Of a stretch of 64,000 bases of DNA, positions 11,680-57,829 are shown piece by piece; position 1 is the first letter of the stretch, and every line of letters starts with the position of its first letter. The notes under the pieces are model-generated. The model ran no database searches. It was not told the origin of the DNA and was given only the letters and a program-made list of their open reading frames with translations. The position numbers were made by a program, and so were the translations under genes. The DNA is taken from the IMG/VR virus record IMGVR_UViG_3300044625_001067, positions 62,001 through 126,000 of that record. One strand, written 5' to 3'.

Positions 11680-11744
11680 ACTATACCGCTTTCCTGTCGG
11701 AAAGGCAAGGGTGGGACCGCCCCATGGTAACGGGGAAACCGCCC
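11680..11744 (-). promoter_or_regulatory. Repeated early promoter element (two boxes)
   Basis: TTGCCT-17-TATAGT, spacer hairpin CTTTCC-4-GGAAAG. Confidence 0.8.
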
Positions 11745-12301
11745 TAAGGCAGTACAAAGGGTGAGTCAGGGTCGTCTGTGAAAGCAGTGAAATAGGTCTC
11801 TGTGGCCGGGTTACCCAGGTTAAGGACGGGAATGTTGTGAAACCTAGCGATGCGAATCGCCTGTGAGGTTCCACCGACATCCTTACCGTTTTTTGTCCAG
11901 CAAATTACCACGTCTGTTGGGCTCTTGCAGTCTCTCCCTAGGACTTGCATCGCGTTCCTAGCCATTAACTTTCGCCCCTTGTCATAGAGCCGAGAGGGTG
12001 CGGGATGGAACCGCTCCACGCTTTCTTGAGCTAGTTCTCGCCCTGGGCACAAAAGGTAATCAAAGTGGGATTTACCGTCGTGGTACCGTCCGTTGAATCC
12101 GTTCCACGGCAAGAATATCTCCTTTCTCCTGGAGTTTGCTTCAAAAGCCGCATCGGCGCCATCAGCACCACCCGAGCGCAGTGTGAACCCTAAACGGTCC
12201 ATCTTTGCCGAAATTCGGCCCATAAGTGCCAGGATCGAACCAGGTGTCTCTTGCCTCCCAATTCCTGTGTACACTTTCATTGCCCCTTTAGCCTCAGTCA
12301 T
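11744..12301 (-). CDS. SLOG-superfamily (DprA/Smf-like) nucleotide-binding protein
   Basis: YTGIGxxETP, LRSGGADGAD, MARN, GGTSQAIRIA. Confidence 0.8.
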   Translation of the reverse strand: MTEAKGAMKVYTGIGRQETPGSILALMGRISAKMDRLGFTLRSGGADGADAAFEANSRRKEIFLPWNGFNGRYHDGKSHFDYLLCPGRELAQESVERFHPAPSRLYDKGRKLMARNAMQVLGRDCKSPTDVVICWTKNGKDVGGTSQAIRIARFHNIPVLNLGNPATETYFTAFTDDPDSPFVLP

Positions 12302-12843
12302 TGTTTCTCATTCAGCTTTTAGATCAATTTTCATAATGTCGTACTCGTGTTCGTCAATACTATCCCACCGACCTGTGTCGGTCCAAGTGAGAGCTGGAGC
12401 TGAGCCTGAGTTCATGAAGTACGGAAATAACTTGCCCATCCAACGCCAGGGCATTAAACTACCTGAAGAAGGCGAGATAACACCGGTACGAACTGAGCCA
12501 TCGCGTAGCACAACGGTGACTTCTTTGCCGAGAAACTCTGCAAGATTAAGAATTGGTGACTCAAGATTCATGGCAAATACTTCATCACAATGAGTCCTTC
12601 CGGTGTAAACCGGACCCGCTTGTTTTCTTGATCCAACTCAGTTAGTTCTGGATGGCTTTGCTCCACCACCAGCTTCCAAAGGAGGCTAGATACTGAGCGC
12701 CATCCGTCCCCTGAGTCCGTGCTGCGTTCAATCAGCCGTAACATGTTTCTTTGCGCATCTGTTATCGGTGGCTTGGGGTTGGTCATGGCTTTCCTTCAGT
12801 TTAAGGGCGTGGGTCGTTGACTCGTTGAAGTTGAGTGTGAGTG

Positions 12844-13119
12844 CTACGCACGAGCAATCATACCGAAGCCAGGCTCCAGAAAACTTTCCAAGTTGCTGTC
12901 GGGATGAACCTTCTCAGCCACAAGTAAAAGAGCCCTGTGGCAGTCCTGCCTGGATCTCCGAGCCCCGAGTTTGTAAGCAGAAAGTGCGTAGGAGTGGGCC
13001 AACTGCAGAAAAGAGTCTCGCAAACCTGCGGGCATCTTCTCAACCTTGCTTCGGGTTTCTTCGGGAAGCCCCAGCCAAAGTGCTTCGAGATCGGCTTCTA
13101 CTTGAGGGTGGAAGGCCAT
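12844..13119 (-). CDS. Hypothetical protein (single-gene cassette start)
   Basis: ORF directly behind promoter 13143; leader shared with the 13431 gene. Confidence 0.65.
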   Translation of the reverse strand: MAFHPQVEADLEALWLGLPEETRSKVEKMPAGLRDSFLQLAHSYALSAYKLGARRSRQDCHRALLLVAEKVHPDSNLESFLEPGFGMIARA

Positions 13120-13142
13120 GGTTGCGTGCGTGGACTGAAGTA

Positions 13143-13187
13143 AGTATACCGCTTTCTCTTCGAGAAAGAAAGGGGGTAAACCGCCCC
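13143..13187 (-). promoter_or_regulatory. Repeated early promoter element
   Basis: TTTCTT-17-TATACT, hairpin CTTTCTC-3-GAGAAAG. Confidence 0.75.
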
Positions 13188-13212
13188 AGGGAAAGGGATC
13201 GGTGGGTGTGCC

Positions 13213-13431
13213 TCAGCACGGGCTATGCGGGGCAGAGCAGTAGGCAGCAAGATACGCTTCGATCTGCTCACTGTTCCACCTGGGGTCCGGAAACTTTGGC
13301 CAGCCGTAGGCGCAGTGTGTAGCGCCATGCTCAGCGCAATCTCGAAGTGTTTTAGTGTGAGGTGGAATAACGTAGTACTTTTCCCAACAAAGCAGCATTG
13401 AGCGTGCTTCTGCTTGAGGGTCGAAGGTCAT
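13213..13431 (-). CDS. Hypothetical protein (single-gene cassette)
   Basis: ORF flanked by two promoter elements. Confidence 0.65.
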   Translation of the reverse strand: MTFDPQAEARSMLLCWEKYYVIPPHTKTLRDCAEHGATHCAYGWPKFPDPRWNSEQIEAYLAAYCSAPHSPC

Positions 13432-13454
13432 GGTTGCGTGCGTGGGCTGAAGTA

Positions 13455-13498
13455 ACTATACCGCTTTCCTGCCGGGAAGGCAAGGGGGGTGAACCGCC
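13455..13498 (-). promoter_or_regulatory. Repeated early promoter element
   Basis: TTGCCT-17-TATAGT. Confidence 0.8.
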
Positions 13499-14392: not shown

Positions 14393-14424
14393 TTTGGTAG
14401 GTTTCAGGTGTTTTGAACTAGTTT

Positions 14425-14468
14425 AGTTTACCGCTTTCCTCCCGGAAAGGCAAGGGGGAAAACCGCCC
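14425..14468 (-). promoter_or_regulatory. Repeated early promoter element
   Basis: TTGCCT-17-TAAACT, hairpin CTTTCC-4-GGAAAG. Confidence 0.8.
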
Positions 14469-16120: not shown

Positions 16121-16282
16121 TTTGTTTGGTATGACATGTAATTTGTAAAGGGAGTCAGGCTCGGGTTTGGGCTCGATTCAGAACTCGGACCAAGAGCACC
16201 AAACCAGTTACCGTGAAGAGAGTGCTGTGAAGGGCAGAAAGGTCGTTCAGAGGAAACATAGTTGCTCAATTGGACTGTAATA

Positions 16283-16327
16283 ACTATACCGCTTTCCTGT
16301 CGGAAAGGTAAGGGGGTAAACCGCCCC
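16283..16327 (-). promoter_or_regulatory. Repeated early promoter element
   Basis: TTACCT-17-TATAGT, hairpin CTTTCC-4-GGAAAG. Confidence 0.8.
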
Positions 16328-16596
16328 CTTTCAGAGTCTTACAGGAACAAGAGTGGCAGCCTCAGAGCGAGTGCGAGCTATCTCGTTGCAGTCGGCCTCA
16401 CTTAGGCCCGTCATACTCTGCAGTTCGTGGTCTTGCACTCCATCCAAAACGGTTACGAGTGCGCGAGCAAAACGTTCGGCTTTCACCTCTGCTTCCCCTC
16501 GCTTCTCGTTCTCGTACAAGACACGGTTTTCAAGCGTTGTAAGGAAATCGGATGCGTTAGTGGAATCCATTGTTTTTGGAGGAACTCAACTCATTT

Positions 16597-16660
16597 GGTA
16601 TACCGTTTCTGCCCCGCAGAAACAAGACGGAAAACAGAACGTTTAGGGCGGTTAACCCCC
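16597..16660 (-). promoter_or_regulatory. Repeated early promoter element
   Basis: TTGTTT-17-TATACC, hairpin GTTTCTGC-3-GCAGAAAC, distal GGTTAACC box. Confidence 0.7.
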
Positions 16661-17661: not shown

Positions 17662-18072
17662 TCATTTGATTGTTTTTTGAGTAGGTTGTGCTAGAACTTC
17701 TCGTAGCTTCCCGACCCATTCCCGGTCCGCAGGGTCATCCAAATCAACGTAAAGATCAAAGTAACCTCCGGGAGAAGACGGGTCAATCATGTGAAACCAT
17801 GCCTGCTGTTTTTTAGTTACAAAGTCAGGCTCGATATCGAGAGACGGGCACAGACCAAAGGTTAACCACTCAAGTTCAAGTCCGCCATCGAAGCTTGAGA
17901 AGGCACTCGGGTACGAATCGGGAGGAAAGTTCTTGTCGAAAAAATCAAACACCCAGCTTTCGAACCAGTCCAAGAGCTCCTTTGAAGGGGCTTTGCACTC
18001 TCCATCGAGCCAGCCGTCCTCCAGCACCCTGAGCTTACCTAGATTTTCACGGAATTGGGTCTAGGTTTGCAT
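17662..18072 (-). pseudogene. Hypothetical protein with in-frame TAG at codon 4
   Basis: ATG 18072 MQT*TQFRENLGKLRVLEDGWLDGE...; TAG at 18061-18063; a GTG restart at 18027 is possible. Confidence 0.5.
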
Positions 18073-19163: not shown

Positions 19164-19865
19164 TTAACTTTCTTTTTCATGGGGTAAGTTTAGCTCGTTT
19201 GATCCACGGAGGCAAGGGGGGGAAACCGTCTGCCCCGGCACGGTTAACCGTTTTCTGCTTACCCAGTCTCCGTAGCTTCCTTCAAAGTCCAACGGGTAAG
19301 GCTTCAGCACACTAAATCGCGCAGCTTCGTCCAAAGCGTCAAGTGCTTCAGTCCTGGCTAGGAAGATGACTGTATTCCACCCAGGGGATGTAATTTTTCC
19401 CTCAATATACTTTGCTCTTTTGTACACCCCTCTGTGAACGACTCCCCAGCATCTTCCGGAGCCTTCGCAAACTTTTGCATGAGACACCCACTTACGCCCC
19501 CGAAGACTAACCCCTCGTCTGGCGTCTGCAGGGACATCTAGTCCAATCAAGCCAGAGTCGGCTATCGTATAGGCCAGAAATGCGCCTTGGCTGGGAATAC
19601 CCTCTAGCAGGTGAGGTAGGGTGGTACCCTCAAAAGAAGATTTGAGTGCCCCGAATCTACACCTATCAAACAAAGCACCTTTGAGTATAGCACCATTAAA
19701 GTTGCAACGGCGAATGAGGGAGTGCCTAAAGTCAGCACCAGTTAAGTCAGTGAAGCTGAAATCAACACGCCAGAGTTTGGACCCGAAGAAAGTGCTGTAA
19801 GGCATATCGGACCCCGAAAAGTCCTTAGAAACAAGGTGTTTCCGGTGGAAATTAGACTCCCTCAT
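19164..19865 (-). CDS. Pentapeptide-repeat protein
   Basis: DFSGSDM/DFSFTDLTGADFRHS/NFNGAILKGALF repeats in the N-half. Confidence 0.8.
   Translation of the reverse strand: MRESNFHRKHLVSKDFSGSDMPYSTFFGSKLWRVDFSFTDLTGADFRHSLIRRCNFNGAILKGALFDRCRFGALKSSFEGTTLPHLLEGIPSQGAFLAYTIADSGLIGLDVPADARRGVSLRGRKWVSHAKVCEGSGRCWGVVHRGVYKRAKYIEGKITSPGWNTVIFLARTEALDALDEAARFSVLKPYPLDFEGSYGDWVSRKRLTVPGQTVSPPCLRGSNELNLPHEKES
19187..19250 (-). promoter_or_regulatory. Repeated early promoter element (two boxes)
   Basis: CGGTTAACCG and GACGGTTTCC boxes, TTGCCT-17-TAAACT, ATG 6 nt after the -10. Confidence 0.75.
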
Positions 19866-21010: not shown

Positions 21011-21053
21011 ACTATATCTTTTTATTACGAAAAGGGTAAGGGGGAAACCGCCC
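21011..21053 (-). promoter_or_regulatory. Repeated early promoter element
   Basis: GGGCGGTTTCCC box, TTACCC-17-TATAGT. Confidence 0.7.
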
Positions 21054-23068: not shown

Positions 23069-23131
23069 ATTATAGCGTTGTTTTCCGAAGAAAACAAGGG
23101 TGGAAACCGCCGTTTTCCGGGGCGGTTTCCC
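23069..23131 (-). promoter_or_regulatory. Repeated early promoter element (distal box inverted)
   Basis: TTGTTT-17-TATAAT, hairpin TTGTTTTC-4-GAAAACAA. Confidence 0.8.
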
Positions 23132-23669: not shown

Positions 23670-24782
23670 TCAGGCAATCCCGAGCAAAACGTCGAGCTTT
23701 TTCGGGGTTAAACCTTCGAGCCACTCTGCAAAGGATCCGACTTTGCCGGATCGAATCGCAAAGCATGCTCCAGAAAGTTCTTTTGACTCGGCAAGTACGG
23801 CTTGAGCGAAATCCTTCTGGTTAAGATGGTTGTGAGCCCTCATGTTCTCGCTCACCGCACTCTCCATCACTTCGATGGAACGCAGGTGAACGTCAAAACC
23901 CCCACGATACTCGGGAAAGTGAAGCAGAAACTCTTCCAAGTCGTCGTTCAGGAAAAGCTCGGAGAAATCCGGTTCGCCGTTTCCTTTAACCCTGTGCAAC
24001 TGGCAATATACGTTGGACTTGTCTTTCTGCCGGTTTCCCTTCCCATCGACAATAATCACTCCTTCAGCGGTACCACGAGAAGAGTCGTTTACAAACTGGG
24101 TTACAGCTTCATGTGAGCGCAGGTCGTAGGTCTGAGCGATATTGAATCGGTTCTCAAAGTACTTGAGATCCTTTTCGTTCAGGTCATCTATTACGCTACG
24201 GACCGTTAAGAGAGGTAAAAGGGGAGTCTCGTAGTCTACAACAATTTTGTTGTCTTTGTGGCACAACTCGTAGACGTAGACAAAATAAGGGTCGAGGTCA
24301 GCCCGGTCATATTCAACTTCATTAAAAACGTGCCAAAACAAGTCGGAGAAGGAGCGGCCCGTGGTCCCGACTTCTGAAGAACCAGCGACTGAACCTGATG
24401 TTGATACCAACCACTCTCCTTTATAGTTGAACAACTTGATCAGAGACCCGTCGTACTTCTCAGCTACACGGGCAGTGGACCAATCAATCTCTGCGGCGTA
24501 ACCCTCCCCGACGTTGAAGAAACGGTCGAAGGCGTACGCAACCAGCCGAAAGTACGGGGAGCCCGTACCATCGTCAACGAGTTCGACTACGGCACCACGG
24601 CAGGCACGAACGATCGGCAGTGCCTTGTCCGCCATCACACTGCCGTACTTTAAGTTGTAGAGAGCAGGGTAACGTTCGTCGCGAGCAACACGAATGTCGT
24701 GCTCGGCAAGTGCTTCAAAAGCAGTCTCGACCCGGTAGTTTAACCAGTCGATTAGAAAGTGGCGCAGGTTTAAAGGTTCCAT
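23670..24782 (-). CDS. T4 Rnl1-like RNA ligase
   Basis: CRGAV, FDRFFN, motif I EKYDGS, YEL, EGVII. Confidence 0.9.
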   Translation of the reverse strand: MEPLNLRHFLIDWLNYRVETAFEALAEHDIRVARDERYPALYNLKYGSVMADKALPIVRACRGAVVELVDDGTGSPYFRLVAYAFDRFFNVGEGYAAEIDWSTARVAEKYDGSLIKLFNYKGEWLVSTSGSVAGSSEVGTTGRSFSDLFWHVFNEVEYDRADLDPYFVYVYELCHKDNKIVVDYETPLLPLLTVRSVIDDLNEKDLKYFENRFNIAQTYDLRSHEAVTQFVNDSSRGTAEGVIIVDGKGNRQKDKSNVYCQLHRVKGNGEPDFSELFLNDDLEEFLLHFPEYRGGFDVHLRSIEVMESAVSENMRAHNHLNQKDFAQAVLAESKELSGACFAIRSGKVGSFAEWLEGLTPKKLDVLLGIA

Positions 24783-24837
24783 GGCAGCTTTAGGTGGGTG
24801 GGACCGTTGAGTTTTGTTTATCTGGGCAAGGTTGGGA

Positions 24838-25467
24838 CTAGCGATTTCGTTTCCCACTGTCCCAGGCTGGCGCTGATCTCCGCTTTGGAAAGTCATGTCC
24901 AAGATCGCCTTTTACTTCCCCGTTAGCGAGGACAACAAGGTGGTCTGTGCCGTAATCGTCCCAGTCGTCGGAGAACTTCGTGTCTACTGACAGAGTAACC
25001 TTGTGCTTGTAAAGAACTTGGCCGAGATCCTTTCTAAACTCGTCCATGTCGAACTTTTCGCCAGGGGTGTACGCGTAGGACGTAACTACTTGGTCTCGAA
25101 GGAGCTGGTCCCAGTCGAGGCAGTTGTACGGGAGTTTTGTCTCTGACATGTCTTCCGGGGAGAAGCAGCTTCGTAGTGTTCTGTGATTACGCCGTTCATT
25201 CGTCCAGGTTCGATCCTCACGGACTCTTACCAGAGTGTAGCAGTATGAGGATGGAACGTTCGGGTTCGTTGCTTTCGGGTGCATCCAGATGTCGGACACA
25301 ACGTAGAGACCGTCTTTTACTGGACTCTTCCGAAAGTGAAGGTAAGGAACTTCAGTGCCCCAGGTTCGACCGTCGGGTGAATTTTTAAGTATTTTTCCAG
25401 GAACAAACACACTGTCCCCTGGCTTCAGCAAAAGTTTTCCTGTAACTGATTCAGGGGGAGACTTCAT
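24838..25467 (-). CDS. Hypothetical protein
   Basis: ORF behind promoter 25495; start moved to ATG 25467. Confidence 0.65.
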   Translation of the reverse strand: MKSPPESVTGKLLLKPGDSVFVPGKILKNSPDGRTWGTEVPYLHFRKSPVKDGLYVVSDIWMHPKATNPNVPSSYCYTLVRVREDRTWTNERRNHRTLRSCFSPEDMSETKLPYNCLDWDQLLRDQVVTSYAYTPGEKFDMDEFRKDLGQVLYKHKVTLSVDTKFSDDWDDYGTDHLVVLANGEVKGDLGHDFPKRRSAPAWDSGKRNR

Positions 25468-25494: not shown

Positions 25495-25556
25495 ACTATA
25501 CCGGTTTTGCCTGAGCAAAACAAGCCGGGAAACCGGTCAAAGCAGGGCGGTTTCCC
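25495..25556 (-). promoter_or_regulatory. Repeated early promoter element
   Basis: TTGTTT-17-TATAGT, hairpin GTTTTGC-4-GCAAAAC. Confidence 0.8.
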
Positions 25557-26806: not shown

Positions 26807-26850
26807 AGTATACCGTTTCTGCCGAGCAAAGACAAGGGTGGAAACCGCCC
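26807..26850 (-). promoter_or_regulatory. Repeated early promoter element
   Basis: TTGTCT-17-TATACT. Confidence 0.8.
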
Positions 26851-27987
26851 TTGGCGGCCCATAGTGTCAAATCTTCGGGAAAAGCAGACTGTACGTGAGA
26901 ATTCCATCCGTTATCTTGTCCACGGTGTGGCCAACGGCTGAAAGGGCGTCGAGCTTTGCGGAAAGCTGTTGAATTGCCTCAATAAGTTGCTGAATTTGCT
27001 GCGGGTCTAGCGTGGGGGTTGCCATAGGCTTGCAAGTTTGTCTCTCTGGGTTAGTGGGAGATGCCCACTGTTGGTACGCTGTTTCTAGATCTTTGACTTT
27101 GTTTGGGTTGGCTACAGGGTAATACCCGTGGATAGTATGGCCTGTGGACTCGAGCCATTCTGGTGGTGTCTTGACCCGCTCTCGCCTTATCTCTCCCGGA
27201 CTTACTCTGCGGTAAAAGTTTCCGTCGTCGAAGAGAAAGTCGTCTCTTAGTGGGTTCGAGTCGTGTCTTCTCTGGTGGGTTAGGAGTTTCATTCGGTGGC
27301 TGTGTACCTTGGAGTCTCGTTGAAGGTTTCTCTAGCTATGTTGAACAATTTTGTGTGGGTTTAAGGTAACCGCCCTTGGATCGCCTTCTGCACTTCAATC
27401 GGTCGTTGGCATCAGACAGAGCTCGGGACTTTAGACGATTTTGTTCCTGGGCCATTGCCATTACGAGGGACACTGTTCCTGAGCTCTCTTTGTAGGAATA
27501 TCCGGTTAAACGTTCGGCGGCATCAAGGGGGTCGAAACTTAGGATCTTGTCGAAGGATTCGCTAGTTGGGTTGGGCATTTTCTTGTAGTAGGTTACCAGA
27601 GCAAAGGTCAGACCTTAGGTTGTTTCGACGCCCATTCCAAAACTGCGTCTTTCTCCACTGAGGAAAGCTTAGACAAGGCAAGTCCTACAAGTTGCTCTGC
27701 TTCTTTCTCACGAAGACGGTCCCCTTCGGTACGCTTGAGCCATTCGCCGCAGGTTTCGTGAACCCAAGTGCGGGATCTAGCATCGCACGGGTTCCATTTA
27801 AACCCCTCTTGTTCGGGAGACATCTCTGTGATCTCAGTCACAGTTTTTGTCGGGTCGCTGTCCCCGAACTCAAAGTCTCTGGCCTGTTTTGCGTCGTCCG
27901 CCAGCACAAAGTCAAATTCGTACCGCTCAACTTTGAAAAGTTTCTGTGCCATTTGAAGAGTCTTTTGGGGGGGGGGGTCACAAGTTA

Positions 27988-28054
27988 AGTATACCGCTTT
28001 CCTCTCGGAAAGGCAAGGCGGGGAAACCGCCCCCAGAGCAAACGGTTAACCGCC
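27988..28054 (-). promoter_or_regulatory. Repeated early promoter element (type copy)
   Basis: GGCGGTTAACCG-9-GGGGCGGTTTCCCCGCC-TTGCCT-17-TATACT. Confidence 0.85.
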
Positions 28055-29256: not shown

Positions 29257-29319
29257 ATTTTACCGCTTTTTCGGAGCATAAACAAGGCGGAGAACCGCCC
29301 CAAAGCAAGCGGTTAACCG
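29257..29319 (-). promoter_or_regulatory. Repeated early promoter element (two boxes)
   Basis: TTGTTT-17-TAAAAT, distal CGGTTAACCG. Confidence 0.75.
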
Positions 29320-33342: not shown

Positions 33343-33386
33343 ACTATAGCTTGTTTAGGGGCGAGGGTAAAGGACGGTTTCCCGCC
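33343..33386 (-). promoter_or_regulatory. Repeated early promoter element (variant, box inverted)
   Basis: TTTACC-17-TATAGT, GGCGGGAAACCGTCC. Confidence 0.65.
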
Positions 33387-34059: not shown

Positions 34060-34105
34060 AGTATAGCGTTTCTGCGATGCAGAAACAAGGGCGGGAAACC
34101 GCCCC
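34060..34105 (-). promoter_or_regulatory. Repeated early promoter element
   Basis: TTGTTT-17-TATACT, hairpin GTTTCTGC-3-GCAGAAAC. Confidence 0.8.
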
Positions 34106-36038: not shown

Positions 36039-36039
36039 A

Positions 36040-36678
36040 TCAACCTTCCTCCTGGCGCAGCATCGCCAAGTTGTTTTCGTAGAAGAGGCGAAGGTTGTCG
36101 TAGGTTTTGACCGGCTGATCGTAGTAACTGCTTCCATTGTAAGTTGGAAGGGAAGCCCATTCTGGTGCGAGTCTTGCGAGTAGAGTTGGGGTAATCTTCC
36201 CAGAGTCAGCGAGGTGCAAAGCGTCGCGTCGCTCTATTAAGTACAAGGCAGCCTGATCCTGGTTAGTGGGACCGAAATCGCTTAGGTTGAGCTTTCGGGC
36301 TGCCTCATACCAAGTACTTGGCAGAAACTGGTAGGCCCCCGCTGCTGCGCTAGCATAACGCAGCGAGTAACGTACTTGATTTGGATGTCTGTCTAGCGTG
36401 GACACCGTTCCACCCCCAAATACAACCCGGTAGCCATCATTATGGCCGTCTTTCCAAGTTCCTTCAGCGAAGCGAATGGTGTTTAAAAGGGCTCGACGCT
36501 CTGGGGTGAGTTTGTAAGCGTGAGTCGGCAGAGAATTGATTGGACCGCAGCCTGTGCAAATGAAGCGCGATTCGAAAGTTGTTTCTGGGGCAATGTCCCT
36601 AGCGGCAACGGTGTTGCTGAAAGGGGTTGCAGCAGTTCCAACGAGGGAGACGGCCATAAGTGTAGCAAGGTTGAGCAT
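36040..36678 (-). CDS. Lambda-R-like muramidase/lytic transglycosylase (GH104-type) with signal peptide
   Basis: ALLNTIRFAEGT, AAGAYQFL, DFGPTNQD, EWASLP. Confidence 0.9.
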   Translation of the reverse strand: MLNLATLMAVSLVGTAATPFSNTVAARDIAPETTFESRFICTGCGPINSLPTHAYKLTPERRALLNTIRFAEGTWKDGHNDGYRVVFGGGTVSTLDRHPNQVRYSLRYASAAAGAYQFLPSTWYEAARKLNLSDFGPTNQDQAALYLIERRDALHLADSGKITPTLLARLAPEWASLPTYNGSSYYDQPVKTYDNLRLFYENNLAMLRQEEG

Positions 36679-38124: not shown

Positions 38125-38195
38125 AACTGCGACTACTCTTATAAACAAACTTACCCCTAATGCACCCACGACGGGGGTGAGTTTTCAATGAGGAC

Positions 38196-40018: not shown

Positions 40019-40062
40019 ATTATACGTTATTTCAGAGTAGAAACAAGGGGGGAAACCGTCCC
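40019..40062 (-). promoter_or_regulatory. Repeated early promoter element
   Basis: TTGTTT-16-TATAAT, GGGACGGTTTCCC box. Confidence 0.7.
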
Positions 40063-40887: not shown

Positions 40888-40977
40888 TTTTCCTTGTATG
40901 GTTCTTGTTTGAGCGGGCTTGCTTGGGTGGATATAAGACCCAAGGTAAGGGTTAGAGTCTCGCACCATGGGCAAGGG

Positions 40978-42328: not shown

Positions 42329-42384
42329 AGTGTTTCAGCGTGGGTTGGAGTGTAGGGTGCTGTTTTGGCTAGGAAAGTTGGCGG

Positions 42385-42715
42385 TGTAAGGGGGCCGAAA
42401 CCCCCGAGTTATGAGTCAGAGTGCGGTTGCTCAAACGGCAACGGCAATCCTCTCGAATTTGACGATGTTGTTAGCGTCTATTTTGTGCTTATGCAAGCGG
42501 CTTTCACTCAGGCGACATCTTTACCCTAGCGAGACCATGGCACCCCCTTGACTAGAGGTGGGAGTTTAACCCACAGTGACCCTGCCTTCTCAGTAAGTCG
42601 GAAGGTTGAAGAAGGGACGGTCACGTTCTCAAATGGAGGTGAGGGGATTCGAACCCCTGTATAGGGCACTATCTTCCAGAGCTACACCCAGTTTAATGTC
42701 GTGTGGTAGGACTGT
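42385..42715 (-). ncRNA. ssrA: Permuted two-piece tmRNA (outer ends approximate)
   Basis: T-arm AGGGGTTCGAATCCCCT plus CACCTCCA (ends 42634) precedes the 5' strand GGGGGTG (starts 42547), giving G3.U70; tag ORF 42431-42475 ANNIVKFERIAVAV*. Confidence 0.9.
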
Positions 42716-44358
42716 CCGCCTAATAAACTTCTATGCTTAGCCCACTCGTTTCAGGGGTGGGTGTTGACCAGGAGCCTATCCCTATGCAAGCTCCGGACGG
42801 TAAAATGAGTTGCAGGTATTCTCCGCCATGTGAACCCTGGCAGCCTTTAACCTCCGAGTAAGAGTAGCTCAGAATGTCTCTATTTTCTACCAACTTTTCA
42901 AGGTCCCCTTCAATCATGAGCGGCAAGCCCCGTAAGTATCGGTTTCACGTCGTATTTTCGTACTAAAAGCGCCAAAAGCTCTTTCTTCAGCCCCTCAAAC
43001 CCACCTACAATTTGGTCCTGGGGAACAGCGTAGCAGGGTCCAACCTTCGTACCCGCCCAAGGGATAACCTGCTTCGTTTCGAGTATCTCTTTTCGGTACT
43101 TCATAAGCAGGTCATCAACTTCGATCATCAGAGTGAGCTGGGGGTCGGGTTGGCTGGATTGCCTCATTTTAACAGTGTAGTTAGTGCTAAGTGAAAGTAA
43201 ACCGGAGCATGCCGTCAAAACTCCTTCAGTAGAGCCGATGTGGAGAAATCTTGGCCAGCTTGAGAGTTTATCAGCACACACTCTGCTTGCACAGAAGGGT
43301 GCCAGAATCCTTTTATCTCAGAAAACGGGACGTAGTTTTCCCTGGCCCAGCTACGAAAAGAGTCCTCTTCTTCAGCTGTGAGACTACGATAGAGTTCCAT
43401 GGACTTTGAGGGAGTTACCGGAGAGTGTTTTTAGTGTAGTCAAAACCGGGACTTCTGGCGAAAGACCCTGCTTCGGGAGACCCTGAATAGAGCAGAGAGG
43501 GATAGTGCCAAAATTATCAGGATCCAGAGGCCATCCACAACTGTGCTACTCAGGGCTATGGGGTCTCCCAAGGTCTGCGAGGGGACTTCAGTCTGAGTCT
43601 GGTGACGCTTTTCCATTTGATGAGAAGGGCGGAGTAAGCAGTGTGGGGTTGAATGGAATGAGAACCTCGGACCAGAAGGAGTCACCGTTGGGGCACTTGT
43701 AGAGAAACTCCCAAGTTTGTGTCCCAACACTTTGTGCTCCAGCGATTAACTTGCAGCTTTCCTCTGTGACTTTCTGAGCGTCCTTTGACCAGAAAGGTCT
43801 CCACCCCTCCGGGTGGTATGCGAAAGCAGGTTGTGCCGAAGAAAACGAGCATAGGGCGCAGAGGGTTAAACTCAGTATAAACTTCATGGGGCAGGATTAA
43901 AGGACAAGATCCCAGTTCGGGTCTCCCGAAAGGTCGACCCACACGCAGTACCCACTCTTGGAAGAGACAAGTACTTTGTTGCCAGTGCGTTTTTCCAGCC
44001 GAACGGCGCTGTCACCGCCCATAGACTTTTCCAGGGCTGCCCTGGCTTTGTTTGACCGGGGGACTAAGCGCATTCCTCCATCTCAGGGTGGTACAGCGGA
44101 GTGGTAAGACTCCCCCAGTTATCGCCCAGGAAGGCCAGGAACCCTGGGACAAGAGTGTCGTTGTAGAAGGGGTCTAGGTCCTCTGGGACTCGGCTATAAG
44201 CCGTGGGGCTCAGCTTCATGAGCTGGTTAACAAGGTGCTGACCCCACCGAATACCCTGGGTCTGAGGCTGGTTAGAAGCCCATTCGACAAATTCCTGAAA
44301 GTCCATTGGATCTCCTGAGTTGAGGGCTAAGTGTCTGAGCACCGCTGCTCATGTAAAT

Positions 44359-44423
44359 ACTATACCGTTTCTGCCGAGCAGAAGCAAGCCGGGAAACCGC
44401 CCCGGAGCAAGCGGTTAACCGCC
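44359..44423 (-). promoter_or_regulatory. Repeated early promoter element (two boxes)
   Basis: GGCGGTTAACCG and GGGGCGGTTTCCC, TTGCTT-17-TATAGT. Confidence 0.85.
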
Positions 44424-44959: not shown

Positions 44960-46102
44960 TCACCGGTTCTCAATACAACCGAGACTTTGAAATTTTTCCA
45001 CAGTCTCAGCACAGAGAGTGTTGATGAGTTGGTCATCTACCGTGTTCGGCAAGACGCACTCGTTCTTCCCCACGTGCTCAGCCTCCTTAAAGAGCTGAGT
45101 TACAATTGTGCTTAGTTCGTCATACGTAATCCTGCCGTACTTAATGTCCAGAAGAAAATCTGCGTCCCCAACCAACTTTCTATTCACAAGAAGCTCTCCG
45201 GTTCGCATTCCCTCAATGGCCATTTTCATAAGTCGAACACAGTGGCTGGCGTTCTTCCCGTCGTACCCACAGGCCCGCTCAATTTCGGATCGCTTCACAT
45301 TCCGATTAGTCAACCAATCTTGGTAATTACTCCACCGTTTTAAATCTGACCGGTACTGTTGGCTTGAGTGGAGAAGGGCCATGTACTCATCGCTTGCTCT
45401 CGTGATTTTCTGTGTTTCATTGAAGCACTCCTCCGGTAAGACACTCTGCTTCAAAATTCCTTTCCAATCAACACGGTCGTTGAGAAGCTCGTACAGCTCG
45501 ACTGAAGGTTGGTAGTACTCGATTCTGTCTTTAATCAGCAAGTACAAGTACTCGATGAAAGACTCGATTTGAGACGGGGTTAAGCTCGGGGAAGAGACAC
45601 CGTAGTCCTCCCACTCCGGTCGCCGTGTTGGAGGGTTTAAGAGCCATTTGCGGTGAGTCTCCATTTTCTTGATCTGGGACCTTGCGTACTGAACGAATGT
45701 GCCAGAGATTCTCCTGGAAATTAGCTTCCTCCGGTTGTCAATTAGCGACTGCCCCAGAAAGTCAAGGTACAGGTAGCTGTCGGGAGTCTGCCAGAGCATC
45801 TCCAAAATGTTGGGGTTTTGCGACCGCAACAAGCTCAGGTACCTGCGAATGCCGTACACCACTGAATCCGAGTTATCTAACTCAGGGAATCTAGAGTTGA
45901 ACTCACCCTCGTCTTGTTGCTCCCCTACCCACCCCTTATCCTTTTGCTCAAATGTTTCGAGAGTGGTGTAAAACCGCTGTGGCGCCACACAGATTCCCTT
46001 AAAGTCCAAGTCGGACATCTCGGTGTTGAGGCCATAGGCGTGGCTGCCTGACTTGCAAAACAGGATCATCCCGTCTTCAATTTCTTTTCGTGTAATTGTC
46101 AT
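44960..46102 (-). CDS. Pol-beta-superfamily nucleotidyltransferase (RlaP/YcgL-like)
   Basis: GSHAYGLNTEMSDLDFKG, NPNILEML, GYDGKNASHCVRL. Confidence 0.88.
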   Translation of the reverse strand: MTITRKEIEDGMILFCKSGSHAYGLNTEMSDLDFKGICVAPQRFYTTLETFEQKDKGWVGEQQDEGEFNSRFPELDNSDSVVYGIRRYLSLLRSQNPNILEMLWQTPDSYLYLDFLGQSLIDNRRKLISRRISGTFVQYARSQIKKMETHRKWLLNPPTRRPEWEDYGVSSPSLTPSQIESFIEYLYLLIKDRIEYYQPSVELYELLNDRVDWKGILKQSVLPEECFNETQKITRASDEYMALLHSSQQYRSDLKRWSNYQDWLTNRNVKRSEIERACGYDGKNASHCVRLMKMAIEGMRTGELLVNRKLVGDADFLLDIKYGRITYDELSTIVTQLFKEAEHVGKNECVLPNTVDDQLINTLCAETVEKFQSLGCIENR

Positions 46103-47636: not shown

Positions 47637-47701
47637 ACTATAACGCTTTCTCTTCGAGAAACCAAGCCGGGAAACCGTCCCCGAGCAAACGGTTAACCGC
47701 C
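47637..47701 (-). promoter_or_regulatory. Repeated early promoter element (two boxes)
   Basis: TTGGTT-17-TATAGT, hairpin TTTCTC-3-GAGAAA. Confidence 0.8.
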
Positions 47702-49029: not shown

Positions 49030-49075
49030 ACTTTAGCGTATCCGCAGCGCAGAAACAAGGGCGGAAAACCGTCCC
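49030..49075 (-). promoter_or_regulatory. Repeated early promoter element
   Basis: TTGTTT-17-TAAAGT. Confidence 0.7.
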
Positions 49076-51472: not shown

Positions 51473-51517
51473 ACTATAGCGTGTTTAACCAAGGAAGGCA
51501 AGCCGGGAAACCGTCCC
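51473..51517 (-). promoter_or_regulatory. Repeated early promoter element
   Basis: TTGCCT-17-TATAGT. Confidence 0.8.
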
Positions 51518-52721: not shown

Positions 52722-52786
52722 ACTATAGCGTGTAACTCATCAGAAAACAAGCCGGGAAACCGTCCCAGGGCAAACGGTTAACCGCC
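52722..52786 (-). promoter_or_regulatory. Repeated early promoter element (two boxes)
   Basis: GGCGGTTAACCG and GGGACGGTTTCCC, TTGTTT-17-TATAGT. Confidence 0.8.
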
Positions 52787-55523: not shown

Positions 55524-56416
55524 AGCTGTTCGGTTTGTAGTTGTTGGAGTAGGGTGGCGGCGCGGAAGAGAAAGTGAGCATCACCAAACTGAAGAGCATC
55601 TGCGGCACGCTTGGTCATCAGTTCCAGTTCTTCCGCCAACTCCCCCACCCCCTCTACTCGTTTCGGCGCTGGCGGGGTTGAAACCTGCTGGAGCAGGGCG
55701 GGGGTGCAGATGATTCGGTCAGCAATCTTCGAAGCCCACCACAACGGATCACCTATAACTGTGCCCTCGGGCATTTCCCCTTCAAGCCACTCAGCAAAGT
55801 CGGGATACCACTGGTCCACTCCCGTGATCAGGGGTGGTAAAGCTACCCTACGGGCAAGTGCGGTGCGAACGATCTCTAGAATTGCGACAACAACGGTGTC
55901 AAAATCGTTTGAGCCAACAAACATTGAAATTTCGTTGTCTGCGCACAGTTGTCTAACATCGGCTAGGCTCGGCCCCGGCTCTGATGGGGCACTGCGCTGT
56001 AGCAGGTGCTGGGCCCAACGAATTGCATCGCAAAGGGGAATGGATCCAAAATAGGGGGAGCCGTGGGTAATTTCGTACCAGTTCCGGAAGTTGCCCTCCA
56101 AGACGGCGTCGCTCTGCCCCTGCTTCGGTGAAGGTATGGACCCGCCGAACTCGGCCAACGCCTCTGGCCCGAACACTTCAGCTACAACCCACGGGTCAAT
56201 GTAACGGGATTCAAAGGGGCCAGGCCGAAACTTGTCAAAGCAGAACGCAATACCTTGCTCGACTAGGCGCAACTGCTCCTCTTCTGGTTCTGCCCTTAAG
56301 GCAGCACGAGCATCGGCGATAGCGTCAGTCCAGGCATTTGCGATTGCCGGGGCAGGTCCTTTGCGGTCTTCAAGTTGTATCAGGCGTTGTAGGGCGGTTC
56401 TTGTAGATAGAGTCAT
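55520..56416 (-). CDS. Mosaic multi-module hypothetical protein
   Basis: Modules shared with the 19862 and 57351 proteins (RTALxRL, GPS, LLQQ..PPAP, VGEL, RAATLLQQ). Confidence 0.7.
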   Translation of the reverse strand: MTLSTRTALQRLIQLEDRKGPAPAIANAWTDAIADARAALRAEPEEEQLRLVEQGIAFCFDKFRPGPFESRYIDPWVVAEVFGPEALAEFGGSIPSPKQGQSDAVLEGNFRNWYEITHGSPYFGSIPLCDAIRWAQHLLQRSAPSEPGPSLADVRQLCADNEISMFVGSNDFDTVVVAILEIVRTALARRVALPPLITGVDQWYPDFAEWLEGEMPEGTVIGDPLWWASKIADRIICTPALLQQVSTPPAPKRVEGVGELAEELELMTKRAADALQFGDAHFLFRAATLLQQLQTEQL

Positions 56417-56566
56417 TGGTGGTATGCGCATTGCGACCAGTAGCCAGGTTGAGAGCCGGATCGAGCCGGGACCCAAACAACTCGTGGCAGGAACACCGGA
56501 GTGTCTGCCCCCGAATGAGGATAACAAAATGGCTTCTTGTCTAAAACAGGGATGTATGCTATCATT

Positions 56567-57019
56567 TTATTGGGGAAAAAGGTCTAAGGCCACCGCAATT
56601 TCCCAACATAAGAGCATAGTTTGGAAAGCAGTTACAAGGGTCCAGACTGTATTTTGTGCAGACATTCGAAACGGGGTAGAGCGAGTGTGGGGGGTTTGAC
56701 TCATGGCGCATTCATGCTCTTGTCTCTCTTCTCCAGGGTAGGGGTAGCAGGTCTCCAGCCGTGCACAGGTTGCTGTAGCTTGTGCAACAACGTCTGACCA
56801 GGAGATCCCATTGGCCTCTGTAATTGACATCAAGACAAGCAGAACATCTGCGGCTTCCGACTTCGGGTCACCACGCTTCCCACGAAGCGCCTCAATTAGT
56901 TCTGATGACTCAAGGTGTAGGTATGCACCACGAGCCGACCAGTGCAGTGACCAACCACGCCTCTTGCACATTGCTAGTATACGTGGTGCTAAGCTCTGAT
57001 CATCAGTTTCCTTACTCAT
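56567..57019 (-). CDS. MazG-like NTP pyrophosphohydrolase
   Basis: LESSELIEA...SEAADVLLVL (ExxE...ExxD). Confidence 0.7.
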   Translation of the reverse strand: MSKETDDQSLAPRILAMCKRRGWSLHWSARGAYLHLESSELIEALRGKRGDPKSEAADVLLVLMSITEANGISWSDVVAQATATCARLETCYPYPGEERQEHECAMSQTPHTRSTPFRMSAQNTVWTLVTAFQTMLLCWEIAVALDLFPQ

Positions 57020-57268
57020 TTCACACCAAGTTCGGTTTAGGGGGTCAGCTCTTTCACTGTGCTTACTTATCAAGTAAGTAGTAGAATTCGGAGTCGGGTT
57101 CAGGTGGAAAATAACCACCACAAAGTGTGGCCATTGAGTCTAGTGCCTCTCGAACAATCTCAGCTTCTTTGCCATACAAACAATCACGTTCCAGAAAGTT
57201 CAACCTACTGTAGATTGTTTCAAAGGCTTCGAGGGGGGTCATTGGACTTGAGGGTTTGCACTGAAGTA

Positions 57269-57332
57269 AGTATACCGTTTCTGCAGAGCAGAAACAAGGG
57301 TGTAAACCGCCCTGGTGCAGCCGGTTATCCGG
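57269..57332 (-). promoter_or_regulatory. Repeated early promoter element
   Basis: TTGTTT-17-TATACT, hairpin GTTTCTGC-3-GCAGAAAC. Confidence 0.8.
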
Positions 57333-57784
57333 CACGGTGAAACGTGGGCATCAATCCTGAACATTTAGCTCTGTACGAACCCACTGAAGAAGAAGTAAGC
57401 ATGCGCCGCTGTGGTCTCCCGCACCTTCTGCAAAGGTCACCGCGTTCCTTAGCACATCTTGTACGTTCCTTACACACCAGTCGTTTTGCTCTAGTAGGGT
57501 TGCAGAGCGGTCTAAAAAGTCTGCTGCCTCAACAGTTCCACCATTTTCAGTATCTCTCTCGTCTTTTGCGTTGTCCCTCAGCCATTGTACAAGCTCAACC
57601 ACTTCCCCTTCTCTCTGGGGTTTTACTCGGAGTGCGGTGGCGGCGATAGCCGAGACTGACTGAAGTGCCTGGAGCTGACCGGCACGGTAGGGTCCGGTGC
57701 TACCCATTATGGGGCGAAAAGACTGGATCCGTTCTAGTGCCTCTGTCGGAGTTATCATGGCAGTGAGTTTCTGGGGTCTATCTA

Positions 57785-57829
57785 ATTTTACCGTTTCTGC
57801 GCCGCAGAAACAAGCCGGGAAACCGCCCC
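57785..57829 (-). promoter_or_regulatory. Repeated early promoter element
   Basis: TTGTTT-17-TAAAAT, hairpin GTTTCTGC-3-GCAGAAAC. Confidence 0.8.

What the first reader, a model, noticed from the sequence alone, without database searches (positions are those of the whole stretch)
11689..57811. Covarying hairpin hidden inside the -35/-10 spacer of the repeated promoters
Seen: the spacer sequence varies but often stays self-complementary with a 3-4 nt loop. Examples: CTTTCC-4-GGAAAG (copies at 11680, 14425, 16283, 27988), CTTTCTC-3-GAGAAAG (13143), GTTTCTGC-3-GCAGAAAC (16597, 34060, 57269, 57785), GTTTTGC-4-GCAAAAC (25495), TTGTTTTC-4-GAAAACAA (23069). Some copies lack it (33343, 51473, 52722). 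Compensatory changes in DNA upstream of the TSS suggest selection on structure or dyad symmetry. Established: N4 virion RNA polymerase reads short-loop DNA hairpin promoters, and MerR-type regulators bind dyads within spacers. Inference: cruciform or ssDNA recognition, a dimeric operator, or an RNA hairpin acting on read-through transcripts from the upstream cassette.
Basis: partly seen in the sequence, partly recalled or inferred. Interest (0 to 1): 0.68.

Follow-up and report, generated by a model that had tools for sequence, protein, structure and literature searches.

The report
Hairpin-forming spacer in cyanophage promoter cassettes
A 277-kb freshwater cyanophage repeats about 70 compact terminator-plus-promoter cassettes, and in about half of them the DNA between the -35 and -10 boxes is a selected small inverted repeat whose function sequence alone cannot settle.

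Summary
The window is part of a 277-kb uncultured myovirus related to Synechococcus phage S-CBWM1. It carries about 71 copies of a sigma-70-type promoter (TTGYYT, 17 nt, TATAGT), 26-28 of them in the window, all on the minus strand. In 35 of 71 copies the spacer holds a perfect stem of 5-8 bp with a 3-4-nt loop. That is far more than shuffles preserving each column's composition give. It still holds after copy families are collapsed to one representative each, and compensated stem variants exist, one at an orthologous locus.

Selection acts on pairing, not on a fixed pair of half-sites. An N4-type hairpin promoter and a MerR-type operator fail their defining tests.

- A GC-rich terminator-like hairpin abuts each -35, so the unit resembles the PeSL cassettes of T4-like phages, including cassette swapping between relatives.
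- The 5' arm of the dyad is that terminator's U-tract.
- The same hairpin style starts right after 19 of 49 phage tRNA genes.

My best reading (about 0.4) is an RNA hairpin in transcripts that run through the terminator. A repressor operator, a supercoil-driven cruciform and a recombination by-product remain open. New variant of a known kind; moderate interest.

The parts
5433..5461 (-). promoter core (-35 to -10); degenerate dyad TTTC-agacg-GAAA
5854..5882 (-). promoter core; no real dyad (3 bp)
7806..7834 (-). promoter core; degenerate main-type dyad (TTGTTTTTGC-tcg-GCAGAAAC)
11680..11708 (-). promoter core; hairpin CTTTCC-gaca-GGAAAG at 11689-11704
   Evidence: RNA fold -7.6 kcal/mol
11709..11750 (-). 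example of the upstream GC-rich terminator-like hairpin region (GGGGCGG...CCC) that abuts the -35
13143..13171 (-). promoter core; hairpin CTTTCTC-gaa-GAGAAAG at 13152-13168
13455..13483 (-). promoter core; degenerate dyad (CCTTCCC-ggca-GGAAAG, one mismatch)
14425..14453 (-). promoter core (-10 TAAACT); hairpin CTTTCC-ggga-GGAAAG at 14434-14449
16283..16311 (-). promoter core; hairpin CTTTCC-gaca-GGAAAG at 16292-16307
16597..16625 (-). promoter-like core with weakened -10 (TATACC); hairpin GTTTCTGC-ggg-GCAGAAAC at 16605-16623
19187..19215 (-). promoter core (-10 TAAACT); no dyad
21011..21039 (-). promoter core; weak dyad TTTT-cgtaat-AAAA
23069..23097 (-). promoter core; hairpin TTGTTTTC-ttcg-GAAAACAA at 23078-23097 (C-UUCG-G loop on the sense strand)
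25495..25523 (-). promoter core; hairpin GTTTTGC-tcag-GCAAAAC at 25504-25521. The orthologous promoter in relatives carries the main-type stem instead
26807..26835 (-). promoter core; 5' arm GTCTTTGC against 3' arm GCAGAAAC (two mismatches). The ortholog in L147 has 3' arm GCAAAGAC, a perfect 8-bp stem
27988..28016 (-). promoter core; hairpin CTTTCC-gaga-GGAAAG at 27997-28012
29257..29285 (-). promoter core (-10 TAAAAT); degenerate dyad
33343..33371 (-). promoter-like core (TTTACC, 17 nt, TATAGT) without a dyad
34060..34088 (-). promoter core; hairpin GTTTCTGC-atc-GCAGAAAC at 34068-34086; the gene downstream encodes an HTH_3 protein
   Evidence: RNA fold -10.2 kcal/mol, z -4.7
40019..40047 (-). 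promoter core; degenerate dyad
44359..44387 (-). promoter core; hairpin TTCTGC-tcg-GCAGAA at 44369-44383
47637..47665 (-). promoter core; hairpin TTTCTC-gaa-GAGAAA at 47647-47661
49030..49058 (-). promoter core (-10 TAAAGT); degenerate main-type dyad
51473..51501 (-). promoter core; no dyad
52722..52750 (-). promoter core; no dyad
57269..57297 (-). promoter core; hairpin GTTTCTGC-tct-GCAGAAAC at 57277-57295
57785..57813 (-). promoter core (-10 TAAAAT); hairpin GTTTCTGC-ggc-GCAGAAAC at 57793-57811
59104..59132 (-). promoter core; no dyad; start codon 6 nt after the -10 (ATGGAAAAC)
61276..61304 (-). promoter core; degenerate main-type dyad; start codon 6 nt after the -10

Best explanation
SHOWN. 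The repeated unit is a compact intergenic cassette on the coding strand. In order it holds the stop codon of the upstream gene, a GC-rich hairpin, a T-rich stretch that is also the -35 hexamer (TTGYYT), a 17-nt spacer, the -10 (TATAGT/TATACT/TATAAT), and then a start codon either 6 nt or about 23 nt further on. The spacer dyad pairs the T/C-rich stretch that follows the GC hairpin (for example GTTTCTGC) with an A/G-rich stretch that ends 2-3 nt before the -10 (GCAGAAAC). Pairing, not a fixed sequence or a fixed half-site spacing, is what is kept.

INFERRED. The GC hairpin plus the T-rich stretch is the intrinsic terminator of the upstream gene, and host-type sigma-70 holoenzyme reads the promoter, as in the PeSL cassettes of T4-like phages. 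The dyad acts as a hairpin in single-stranded nucleic acid, most likely the RNA of transcripts that run through the terminator. There it folds the U-tract onto its downstream complement, directly beside the terminator stem. This hides an A/U-rich single strand and gives read-through and intercistronic RNA a closed two-hairpin structure, which would serve as insulation or stabilisation, or perhaps as a pause before the next promoter. On this reading it lies in the promoter spacer because the terminator tail and the next promoter share the same 30 nt. It is not a promoter-recognition element.
For: Anatomy
- 71 copies lie between 4 and 171 kb of the 277-kb genome and none in the late region.
- The A1 alignment is ungapped, with invariant T, A, A, T of the -10.
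- The upstream stop codon is a median 41 nt before the -35.
- The upstream 44 nt fold to a mean of -14.4 kcal/mol (z -1.59). The last paired base lies within 3 nt of TTG in 64 of 71 copies, and the next 9 nt hold 5.45 T on average.

Selection on pairing
- There are 22 distinct perfect stems.
- Compensated variants include GTCTTTGC/GCAAAGAC at the ortholog of window 26807, GTCTCTGC/GCAGAGAC, GGTTTTGC/GCAAAACC, GTTTTCG/CGAAAAC and TTTCGCC/GGCGAAA.
- The gap between the TTTCY and RGAAA blocks is 3, 4, 5 or 7 nt in different types. A rigid dimer would not tolerate that.

Pointers to RNA
- The same hairpin style (pyrimidine-rich 5' arm, C-G closing pair, 5-8 bp, loop 3-6) begins 0-3 nt after 19 of 49 tRNA genes, against 2.3% of random places. 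No -35/-10 pair flanks those sites. Some stems are identical to promoter ones (GTTTTGC/GCAAAAC) or differ only in the outermost pair (TTTTCTGC/GCAGAAAA against GTTTCTGC/GCAGAAAC).
- The cultured relative S-CBWM1 shows the same after 12 of 34 tRNA genes.
- In those trailers G.T mismatches outnumber A.C by 10 to 4.
- The shorter promoter stems carry G..A or UUCG loops on the sense strand only: GAA, GAGA, GGGA, GAAA, GTAA, TTCG.
- Stem length tracks the T-richness of the terminator tail (rho 0.42, p 0.0002), not the quality of the -10.
- Predicted RNA hairpins are -4.7 to -10.2 kcal/mol.
Against: - In the promoter dyads themselves, G.T and A.C mismatches are equal (23:23; 9:8 for internal ones). 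There is no RNA-specific wobble signal.
- A perfect inverted repeat has the same arms on both strands, so the pyrimidine-rich 5' arm does not identify a strand.
- If the terminator works well, few transcripts would ever contain the 3' arm.
- The few terminator-like GC hairpins that lack a promoter mostly lack a second hairpin too (n about 4).
- The dyad comes and goes at orthologous genes when promoter cores are swapped, so it is dispensable for any single gene.
- The loops of the main type are unconstrained.
- No 5' or 3' RNA ends could be mapped. The metatranscriptome runs that hold relatives are kept only as contigs.
Confidence: 0.4

Rival explanations
1. Operator(s) for dimeric phage regulators. 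One or several small DNA-binding proteins sit on the duplex dyad between -35 and -10 and shut off, or time, the early promoters, as Arc or Cro-type repressors do.
For: - The dyad is centred at about -24, inside the RNA polymerase footprint.
- The main type has invariant 8-bp arms and a free 3-bp centre in 30 copies with 13 different centres, the classic look of an operator.
- The same arms persist in a second clade whose -10 (TATGAT) and upstream motif differ.
- There is no wobble bias.
- The phage encodes three HTH_3 ORFs and one borderline RHH ORF. At least two of the HTH_3 ORFs and the RHH ORF lie just downstream of dyad-bearing promoters of different types: window 34060 main type, G000 170545 GTTTTCC type, window 11680 CTTTCC type.
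Against: - Half-site spacing and sequence differ between types, and the inner positions are complementary in every type. A protein that contacts the outer blocks would not require that.
- Matched changes in both arms are not expected for a protein site.
- Hairpins of the same style flank tRNA genes, where there is no promoter.
- Several paralogous regulators would have to be assumed.
Confidence: 0.2
2. Supercoil-driven DNA hairpin or cruciform. Under negative supercoiling the spacer extrudes, which removes about 16-19 bp between the hexamers and switches the promoter off. This would tie early phage transcription to DNA topology.
For: - Direct precedent: the N4 P1 hairpin (5-7-bp stem, 3-nt loop) placed between the -35 and -10 of E. 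coli rrnB abolished promoter activity, and novobiocin restored it. Extrusion there needs a C:G closing pair and G and A loop bases (PMC4496689, read).
- Here the closing pair is C-G in all main types, and the shorter stems carry C-GAA-G or C-GNNA-G loops.
- There is no wobble bias.
- The dyad is tied to promoters rather than to promoter-less terminators.
- DNA-fold energies are -3.7 to -7.3 kcal/mol.
- The phage encodes a topoisomerase II/gyrase A-like protein.
Against: - The commonest type has arbitrary loops, which the N4 work found insufficient for extrusion.
- The G..A loops are always on the sense strand.
- Stems are short.
- It gives no explanation for the hairpins next to tRNA genes.
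Confidence: 0.15
3. Recombination by-product or selfish spread. Palindromic promoter cores are favoured or created by the cassette-shuffling process itself (template switching, gene conversion, structure-specific nicking) and have no role in expression.
For: - Orthologous promoters in relatives differ by whole-core or loop-only swaps, with break points inside the element. All three loop bases can change while the flanks stay identical.
- Metatranscriptome contigs of relatives lose homology exactly at the elements, near window 13439-13498, 14395-14408, 16270-16328 and 16586-16633.
- Presence of the dyad is not conserved at orthologous genes.
- Perfect 7-bp hairpins are about threefold over chance genome-wide: 116 against roughly 34 expected (and my arithmetic).
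Against: - The arms are kept perfect while the loops are saturated with change, which points to purifying selection.
- The position is fixed within the spacer.
- Microhomology alone, as proposed for PeSLs, needs no palindrome.
Confidence: 0.12
4. N4-type hairpin promoter read by a phage single-subunit RNA polymerase.
For: Stem and loop sizes resemble N4 early promoters.
Against: - No PF00940 hit, though that search rang in no control genome.
- The longest ORFs are tail, polymerase, RNR and similar proteins.
- Conserved TTG, 17 nt, TATAGT geometry.
- Half of the copies have no hairpin.
- There is no conserved loop purine in the main type.
Confidence: 0.02

Closest known systems
PeSL (promoter-early stem-loop) cassettes of T4-like phages (Arbiol et al. 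2010, PMC2839356; Comeau et al. 2014, PMC4122927)
   Same: - A sigma-70-like promoter with a 17-nt spacer lies immediately behind a stem-loop taken as the terminator of the upstream gene.
- The unit is repeated tens of times between small ORFs of unknown function.
- Insertions, deletions and replacements between close relatives have break points in or beside the element.
   Different: - The carrier is not T4-like. Its DNA polymerase is gamma-like, 57% identical to that of Synechococcus phage S-CBWM1.
- The region upstream of the -35 is GC-rich, not AT-rich.
- About half of the copies hold a second, covarying hairpin inside the spacer whose 5' arm is the terminator tail and -35. The PeSL papers do not describe this: the terms 'spacer' and 'palindrom' do not occur in the 2010 text.
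N4 virion-RNA-polymerase hairpin promoters, and the engineered rrnB promoter carrying the N4 P1 hairpin in its spacer (reviewed in PMC4496689)
   Same: - Small hairpin (5-8-bp stem, 3-4-nt loop) with a C-G closing pair.
- G..A loops in the shorter stems.
- The engineered construct has the same placement, between the -35 and -10 of a sigma-70 promoter.
   Different: - No virion or T7-like RNA polymerase was found.
- Host-type hexamers are conserved.
- The loop is unconstrained in the main type.
- The stable loops lie on the non-template strand.
- The natural function here is untested.
Repressor operators lying between -35 and -10 (the P22 Arc operator in Pant; from my own knowledge)
   Same: A dyad centred in the spacer of a phage promoter. 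Candidate HTH and RHH genes are present.
   Different: Variable half-site spacing, inner complementarity and matched changes on both arms point to pairing rather than protein contacts.
3' inverted repeats of chloroplast mRNAs, which process and stabilise RNA without terminating transcription (Stern and Gruissem 1987; from my own knowledge)
   Same: Short inverted repeats in a cyanobacterial-type expression system, placed at RNA 3' flanks, with a polarity that cannot terminate (A-rich 3' arm, no U tail).
   Different: Here they overlap the next promoter and also follow tRNA genes. No processing data exist.

Membership tests
PeSL composite promoter-terminator cassette | sigma-70-like -35 and -10 with a spacer of about 17 nt | tested here: met
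   TTGYYT, 17 nt, TATAGT/TATACT/TATAAT; T, A, A, T of the -10 invariant in 71 copies
PeSL composite promoter-terminator cassette | stable stem-loop immediately upstream of the -35, in the intergenic space after the upstream stop codon | tested here: met
   mean MFE -14.4 kcal/mol; stem ends within 3 nt of TTG in 64 of 71 copies; stop codon a median 41 nt upstream
PeSL composite promoter-terminator cassette | break points of indels and replacements between close relatives lie at the elements | tested here: met
   orthologous promoters with swapped cores or flanks; contigs of relatives diverge at the elements
PeSL composite promoter-terminator cassette | [quoted passage not shown] | tested here: not met
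   the upstream motif is GGGCGGTTTCCCGSC, which is GC-rich
PeSL composite promoter-terminator cassette | carried by a T4-like myovirus | tested here: inconclusive
   no Gp23 or AsiA Pfam hit, but those searches rang in no control genome; the nearest cultured relative is S-CBWM1 (Aokuangvirus), not T4-like
PeSL composite promoter-terminator cassette | measured promoter and terminator activity; mini-circle formation | not testable with these tools
   needs reporter assays and inverse PCR
N4 vRNAP hairpin promoter | phage single-subunit (T7-like) virion RNA polymerase | tested here: inconclusive
   no PF00940 hit, but the control genomes also did not ring; none of the 9 longest ORFs is a polymerase of that kind
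N4 vRNAP hairpin promoter | conserved loop (G..A, central purine) and conserved stem bases in all promoters | tested here: not met
   13 different loops in the main type; half of the copies have no stem
MerR-type promoter | over-long spacer of 19-20 bp with a dyad | tested here: not met
   the spacer is 17 nt; alignment A1 is ungapped
MerR-type promoter | MerR-family regulator encoded | tested here: not met
   no PF13411 hit, while 12 of 14 control genomes rang
Dimeric repressor operator | two half-sites of fixed sequence at fixed spacing | tested here: not met
   met within the main type only; across types the TTTCY/RGAAA blocks are 3-7 nt apart and the stems differ
Dimeric repressor operator | cognate DNA-binding protein | tested here: inconclusive
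   three HTH_3 ORFs and one borderline RHH ORF exist; binding not testable here
Intrinsic terminator (for the spacer hairpin itself) | stem followed directly by a U-tract | tested here: not met
   the 3' arm is A-rich and is followed by CGG TATAGT; as a palindrome it has the same polarity on both strands
Any Rfam family | match at the gathering score | tested here: not met
   only tRNAs and a permuted tmRNA matched in the window

The most novel reading that the evidence does not exclude
The spacer hairpins are natural supercoil sensors. In about 35 early promoters of a cyanophage, negative supercoiling extrudes the dyad and silences the promoter. This would be a natural counterpart of the engineered rrnB promoter carrying the N4 hairpin, and it would couple phage early transcription to host or phage DNA topology, which in cyanobacteria is reported to follow light and the circadian clock (from my own knowledge).
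Probability: 0.15. Interest if true: 0.8.

Novelty: new variant of a known kind. Interest (0 to 1): 0.5.

Why it matters
- It extends PeSL-type terminator-promoter cassettes, and the gene shuffling that goes with them, beyond T4-like phages to a large uncultured freshwater cyanophage lineage.
- It adds a feature not described for PeSLs: a structure-selected hairpin built from the terminator tail and the promoter spacer.
- If the hairpin acts in RNA, it shows how a phage packs a terminator, an RNA-structure element and a promoter into about 75 nt.
- If it acts in DNA, it would be a rare natural case of promoter control by hairpin extrusion.
- In either case the roughly 70 natural variants (perfect, broken and compensated stems) form a ready-made mutant series for reporter assays.

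Tried and rejected
- **Near-identical phage DNA:** a megablast of 10 kb of the window against GenBank phages found nothing. A protein search placed the phage next to S-CBWM1.
- **RNA ends:** twelve metatranscriptome runs hold parts of the stretch. Four were laid on 5.6 kb, within the operators' 6,000-letter limit. All are kept as contigs of 90-99% relatives. The contigs break at the repeats, so they give no transcript starts or ends. They do show cassette mosaicism.
- **Wobble test for RNA:** no excess of G.T over A.C in the promoter dyads.
- **Polarity argument:** I first took the pyrimidine-rich 5' arm as a strand signal. I dropped this because a perfect inverted repeat has the same 5' arm on both strands.
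- **Simple promoter/terminator scan:** it found few of the elements because its thresholds are strict.
- **Long-range pairing** between the upstream CCGYTT and the AARCGG before the -10: inspected by eye, with no consistent covariation.
- **Spacer hairpin as a second terminator:** rejected as a canonical terminator because there is no U tail.
- **S-CBWM1 promoters:** they share the GC hairpin plus -35 but have no consistent spacer dyad, so that cultured phage is not a model for the dyad itself.
- a faulty regular expression; superseded.
- **Pfam searches for Gp23, AsiA and T7-like RNA polymerase:** they rang nowhere, not even in controls. I treat them as uninformative, not as absence.

Full report
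**What the window is.** The window is bases 62,001-126,000 of a 277,244-bp virus record from IMG/VR, estimated 98% complete.
- It has no near-identical DNA among GenBank phages.
- Its gamma-like DNA polymerase is 56.8% identical to that of Synechococcus phage S-CBWM1, and more distantly related to those of S-TIM5 and the Acaryochloris and Microcystis phages.
- Its large ORFs are myovirus tail, sheath, baseplate and protease genes plus ribonucleotide reductase.
- Lake-water metatranscriptomes hold close relatives. It is therefore an uncultured freshwater cyanophage.
- Genes in the window are small and almost all on the minus strand. They include NAMPT, PRPP synthetase, an ADP-ribosyltransferase, an ADP-ribosylglycohydrolase, two RNA ligases and an RlaP-type RNA-repair protein.
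- The phage encodes two sigma-70-family proteins in its late region. No T7/N4-like RNA polymerase was detected, but that search rang in no control genome, so it is weak evidence.

**The repeated element.** Read on the coding strand, the unit is:
1. a GC-rich motif GGGCGGTTTCCCGSC, often preceded by a second copy or by its inverted partner AACCGCC;
2. the -35, TTGYYT;
3. a 17-nt spacer;
4. CGG/CGC followed by the -10, TATAGT, TATACT or TATAAT.

I curated 71 copies, all between 4 and 171 kb and none in the structural and replication region at 171-277 kb. Twenty-six lie in the window, plus two weaker variants at 16597 and 33343. The 29-nt cores align without a gap.

The upstream ORF stops a median 41 nt before the -35. 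The next start codon lies 6 nt after the -10 in nine copies, which implies leaderless mRNAs beginning ATGGAAAAC or similar, or 22-25 nt after it in sixteen.

The upstream 44 nt fold to a mean of -14.4 kcal/mol. The stem ends within 3 nt of TTG in 64 of 71 copies, and the following 9 nt hold 5.45 T on average. This is the geometry of an intrinsic terminator whose U-tract is the -35 hexamer and the start of the spacer.

**Check of the observation.** All named examples are present.
- Thirty-five of 71 copies have a perfect stem of at least 5 bp, 29 at least 6 bp and 19 at least 7 bp. No shuffle of three kinds reaches these numbers. The strictest kind permutes every alignment column and so keeps the position-specific composition; it gives means of 10.4, 4.1 and 1.4.
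- In the formal pair count, 71.7% of cells are paired against 60.3 +/- 1.2 in shuffles, and the covariation score is 0.351 against 0.194. Registers slid by 1-3 columns, which keep relatedness, give 46-54% and at most 0.205.
- Because the copies are related, I collapsed 144 distinct cores from this genome and from IMG/VR relatives into 52 representatives. Stems of at least 5/6/7 bp number 11/7/5 against 4.4/1.5/0.4 expected, with 4, 0 and 0 of 2000 permutations reaching them.

The dyad is real and more than chance or composition gives.

**What varies and what does not.**
- There are 22 distinct perfect stems.
- The main one, GTTTCTGC-N3-GCAGAAAC, occurs 30 times with 13 different loops.
- The others include CTTTCC-N4-GGAAAG, (G)TTTTCTC-GAA-GAGAAAA(C), TTTTCC-GAA-GGAAAA, GTTTTGC-N4-GCAAAAC and TTGTTTTC-TTCG-GAAAACAA.
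- The closing pair is C-G throughout these types.
- The outer T/A blocks overlap positions that are conserved anyway: the -35, and an A-rich stretch at about -19 to -16 that persists in copies without a dyad. The real covariation therefore sits in the inner pairs. Pair 9/15 is GC 27, CG 17, UA 6; pair 7/17 is UA 33, CG 23.
- The gap between the TTTCY and RGAAA blocks is 3, 4, 5 or 7 nt depending on the type.
- Relatives supply compensated variants of the main stem: GTCTCTGC/GCAGAGAC, GGTTTTGC/GCAAAACC, GTTTTCG/CGAAAAC and TTTCGCC/GGCGAAA.
- One orthologous case stands out. At window 26807-26835 the arms are GTCTTTGC and GCAGAAAC, with two mismatches. In locus L147 the same flank and the same 5' arm are joined to GCAAAGAC, a perfect 8-bp stem.

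These facts favour selection on pairing over recognition of fixed half-sites.

**Recombination.** Orthologous promoters in related contigs differ by whole cores, by all three loop bases at once, or by an unrelated upstream or downstream flank, with break points inside the element. The dyad type, or its presence, can differ at the same gene in different phages: none, main type or GGTTTTGC upstream of one gene; GTTTTGC against the main type at window 25495. Contigs of relatives lose homology at the elements. This is the behaviour described for the PeSL cassettes of T4-like phages: a sigma-70-like promoter directly behind a terminator stem-loop, repeated in plastic regions and mediating modular shuffling (PMC2839356 and PMC4122927). 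Those papers do not describe a dyad inside the spacer.

**A wider pattern.**
- The exact main dyad occurs in this genome only in promoter cores.
- In IMG/VR it occurs almost only in promoters of this clade and of a second clade with -10 TATGAT and upstream CGGTTCTC.
- Hairpins of the same style are not confined to promoters. The phage has 49 tRNA genes and a permuted tmRNA. At 19 of the 49 tRNA genes a perfect stem of at least 5 bp with a T/C-rich 5' arm (T 53%, C 31%) starts 0-3 nt after the gene, against 2.3% at random places. Some of these stems equal promoter stems.
- Nine tRNA genes have a hairpin ending 0-3 nt before the gene.
- S-CBWM1 shows the same after 12 of 34 tRNA genes, although its promoters (GGGCGGTAAACCGCCC, TTTACA, 17 nt, TAAAGT) have no consistent spacer dyad.
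- In the tRNA trailers G.T mismatches outnumber A.C by 10 to 4. In promoter dyads they are equal.

**Mechanism.**
- *RNA hairpin (about 0.4).* I take the dyad to be a structure-forming element and think it most likely acts in RNA that reads through the terminator. It would fold the U-tract onto its complement beside the terminator stem. Supporting this: the tRNA-flank parallel, the sense-strand G..A and UUCG loops of the shorter stems, and the link between stem length and T-richness of the tail. Against it: the missing wobble bias, the dispensability of the dyad at single genes, and the small amount of read-through expected if the terminator is efficient.
- *Operator (about 0.2).* The main type looks like a classic operator, and three HTH_3 ORFs and one borderline RHH ORF exist. 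At least two of the HTH_3 ORFs and the RHH ORF lie behind dyad promoters of different types.
- *Supercoil-driven extrusion (about 0.15).* There is a direct engineered precedent: the N4 P1 hairpin placed in the rrnB spacer silences that promoter in a gyrase-dependent way, and extrusion needs a C:G closing pair and G and A loop bases (PMC4496689). The arbitrary loops of the main type count against it.
- *Recombination by-product (about 0.12).* This cannot be excluded.
- *N4-type and MerR-type readings.* Both fail their defining features.

**Verdict.** The unit is best filed as working like a PeSL cassette, in a non-T4 cyanophage lineage, with an extra spacer hairpin. That makes it a new variant of a known kind. 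The function of the hairpin needs RNA-end mapping and compensatory-mutant reporters.

Noticed in passing
G000 126-146 kb (locus L128), 40-56 kb (L126) and window 59332-62733; S-CBWM1 locus L121 11-25 kb: At 19 of 49 phage tRNA genes a perfect 5-8-bp hairpin with a T/C-rich 5' arm begins 0-3 nt after the tRNA (2.3% at random places). Nine tRNA genes have one ending 0-3 nt before the gene. S-CBWM1 shows the same after 12 of 34. This may be a tRNA-processing or spacer-insulation feature.
   Followed up: partly
G000 192006, 192968, 193479, 194369, 194721, 248775 (loci L116, L118): A second repeated promoter-like class in the late region: a variable hairpin, then ATATAGTCTGAAC, then a hairpin with a GAAA or GTAA loop, then (in the five copies at 192-195 kb) a conserved leader AAGTAAAGGATAAAGAGCCTTTACGATAAC. 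There is no -35.
   Followed up: no
window 42340-42723 (-): The phage encodes a permuted (two-piece type) tmRNA. Rfam tmRNA_permuted scores 67.9 bits; ARAGORN gives the tag ANNIVKFERIAVAV.
   Followed up: no
window 59104, 61276, 5433 and six more copies elsewhere in the genome: The start codon lies 6 nt after the -10 (often ATGGAAAAC, sometimes GTG), implying leaderless mRNAs for a subset of early genes.
   Followed up: partly
window 30868-33320, 37204-38169, 40027-40974 (-): An NAD-centred gene set: NAMPT, PRPP synthetase-like protein, an ADP-ribosyltransferase of the exoenzyme family and an ADP-ribosylglycohydrolase. This recalls T4 Alt/Mod-type host modification.
   Followed up: no
window 134-1612, 9689-10768, 23670-24902, 44960-46102 (-): An RNA-repair set: Rnl2-like and Rnl1-like RNA ligases, an RlaP nucleotidyltransferase, and a 492-aa protein (PHROG 'RNA-binding protein', Pfam DUF2828/DUF7788).
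   Followed up: no
G000 252284-252508 and 258897-259046 (loci L122, L123): Two sigma-70-family ORFs in the late region. They may read the late promoter class rather than the repeated early promoters.
   Followed up: no
window 33797-33952, 35287-35427, 11260-11364; G000 170617-170775: Three HTH_3 ORFs and one borderline RHH ORF. At least two of the HTH_3 ORFs and the RHH ORF sit just downstream of dyad promoters of different types.
   Followed up: partly
window 34242-34263 and about 27960-27975: Long G/C homopolymer runs: GGGGGGGGG-ttca-CCCCCCCCC, a 9-bp hairpin, and an 11-nt C run just after the promoter at 27988.
   Followed up: no
window 36000-36040 (-), G000 about 98037: A promoter-like copy with S-CBWM1-type hexamers (TTTACC, 17 nt, TAAGCT) behind GGGCGGTTTCCCGAAC. 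In relative L020 its -10 reads TATACT.
   Followed up: no
G000 18010-18066 (-), locus L124: An orphan element on the opposite strand of a plus-strand gene block: the GC motif, TTG and an intact TTTCTC-GAA-GAGAAA hairpin, but no -10.
   Followed up: no
window 8846-9979 (+): A homing-endonuclease-like ORF on the opposite strand, overlapping the end of the RNA ligase gene region.
   Followed up: no
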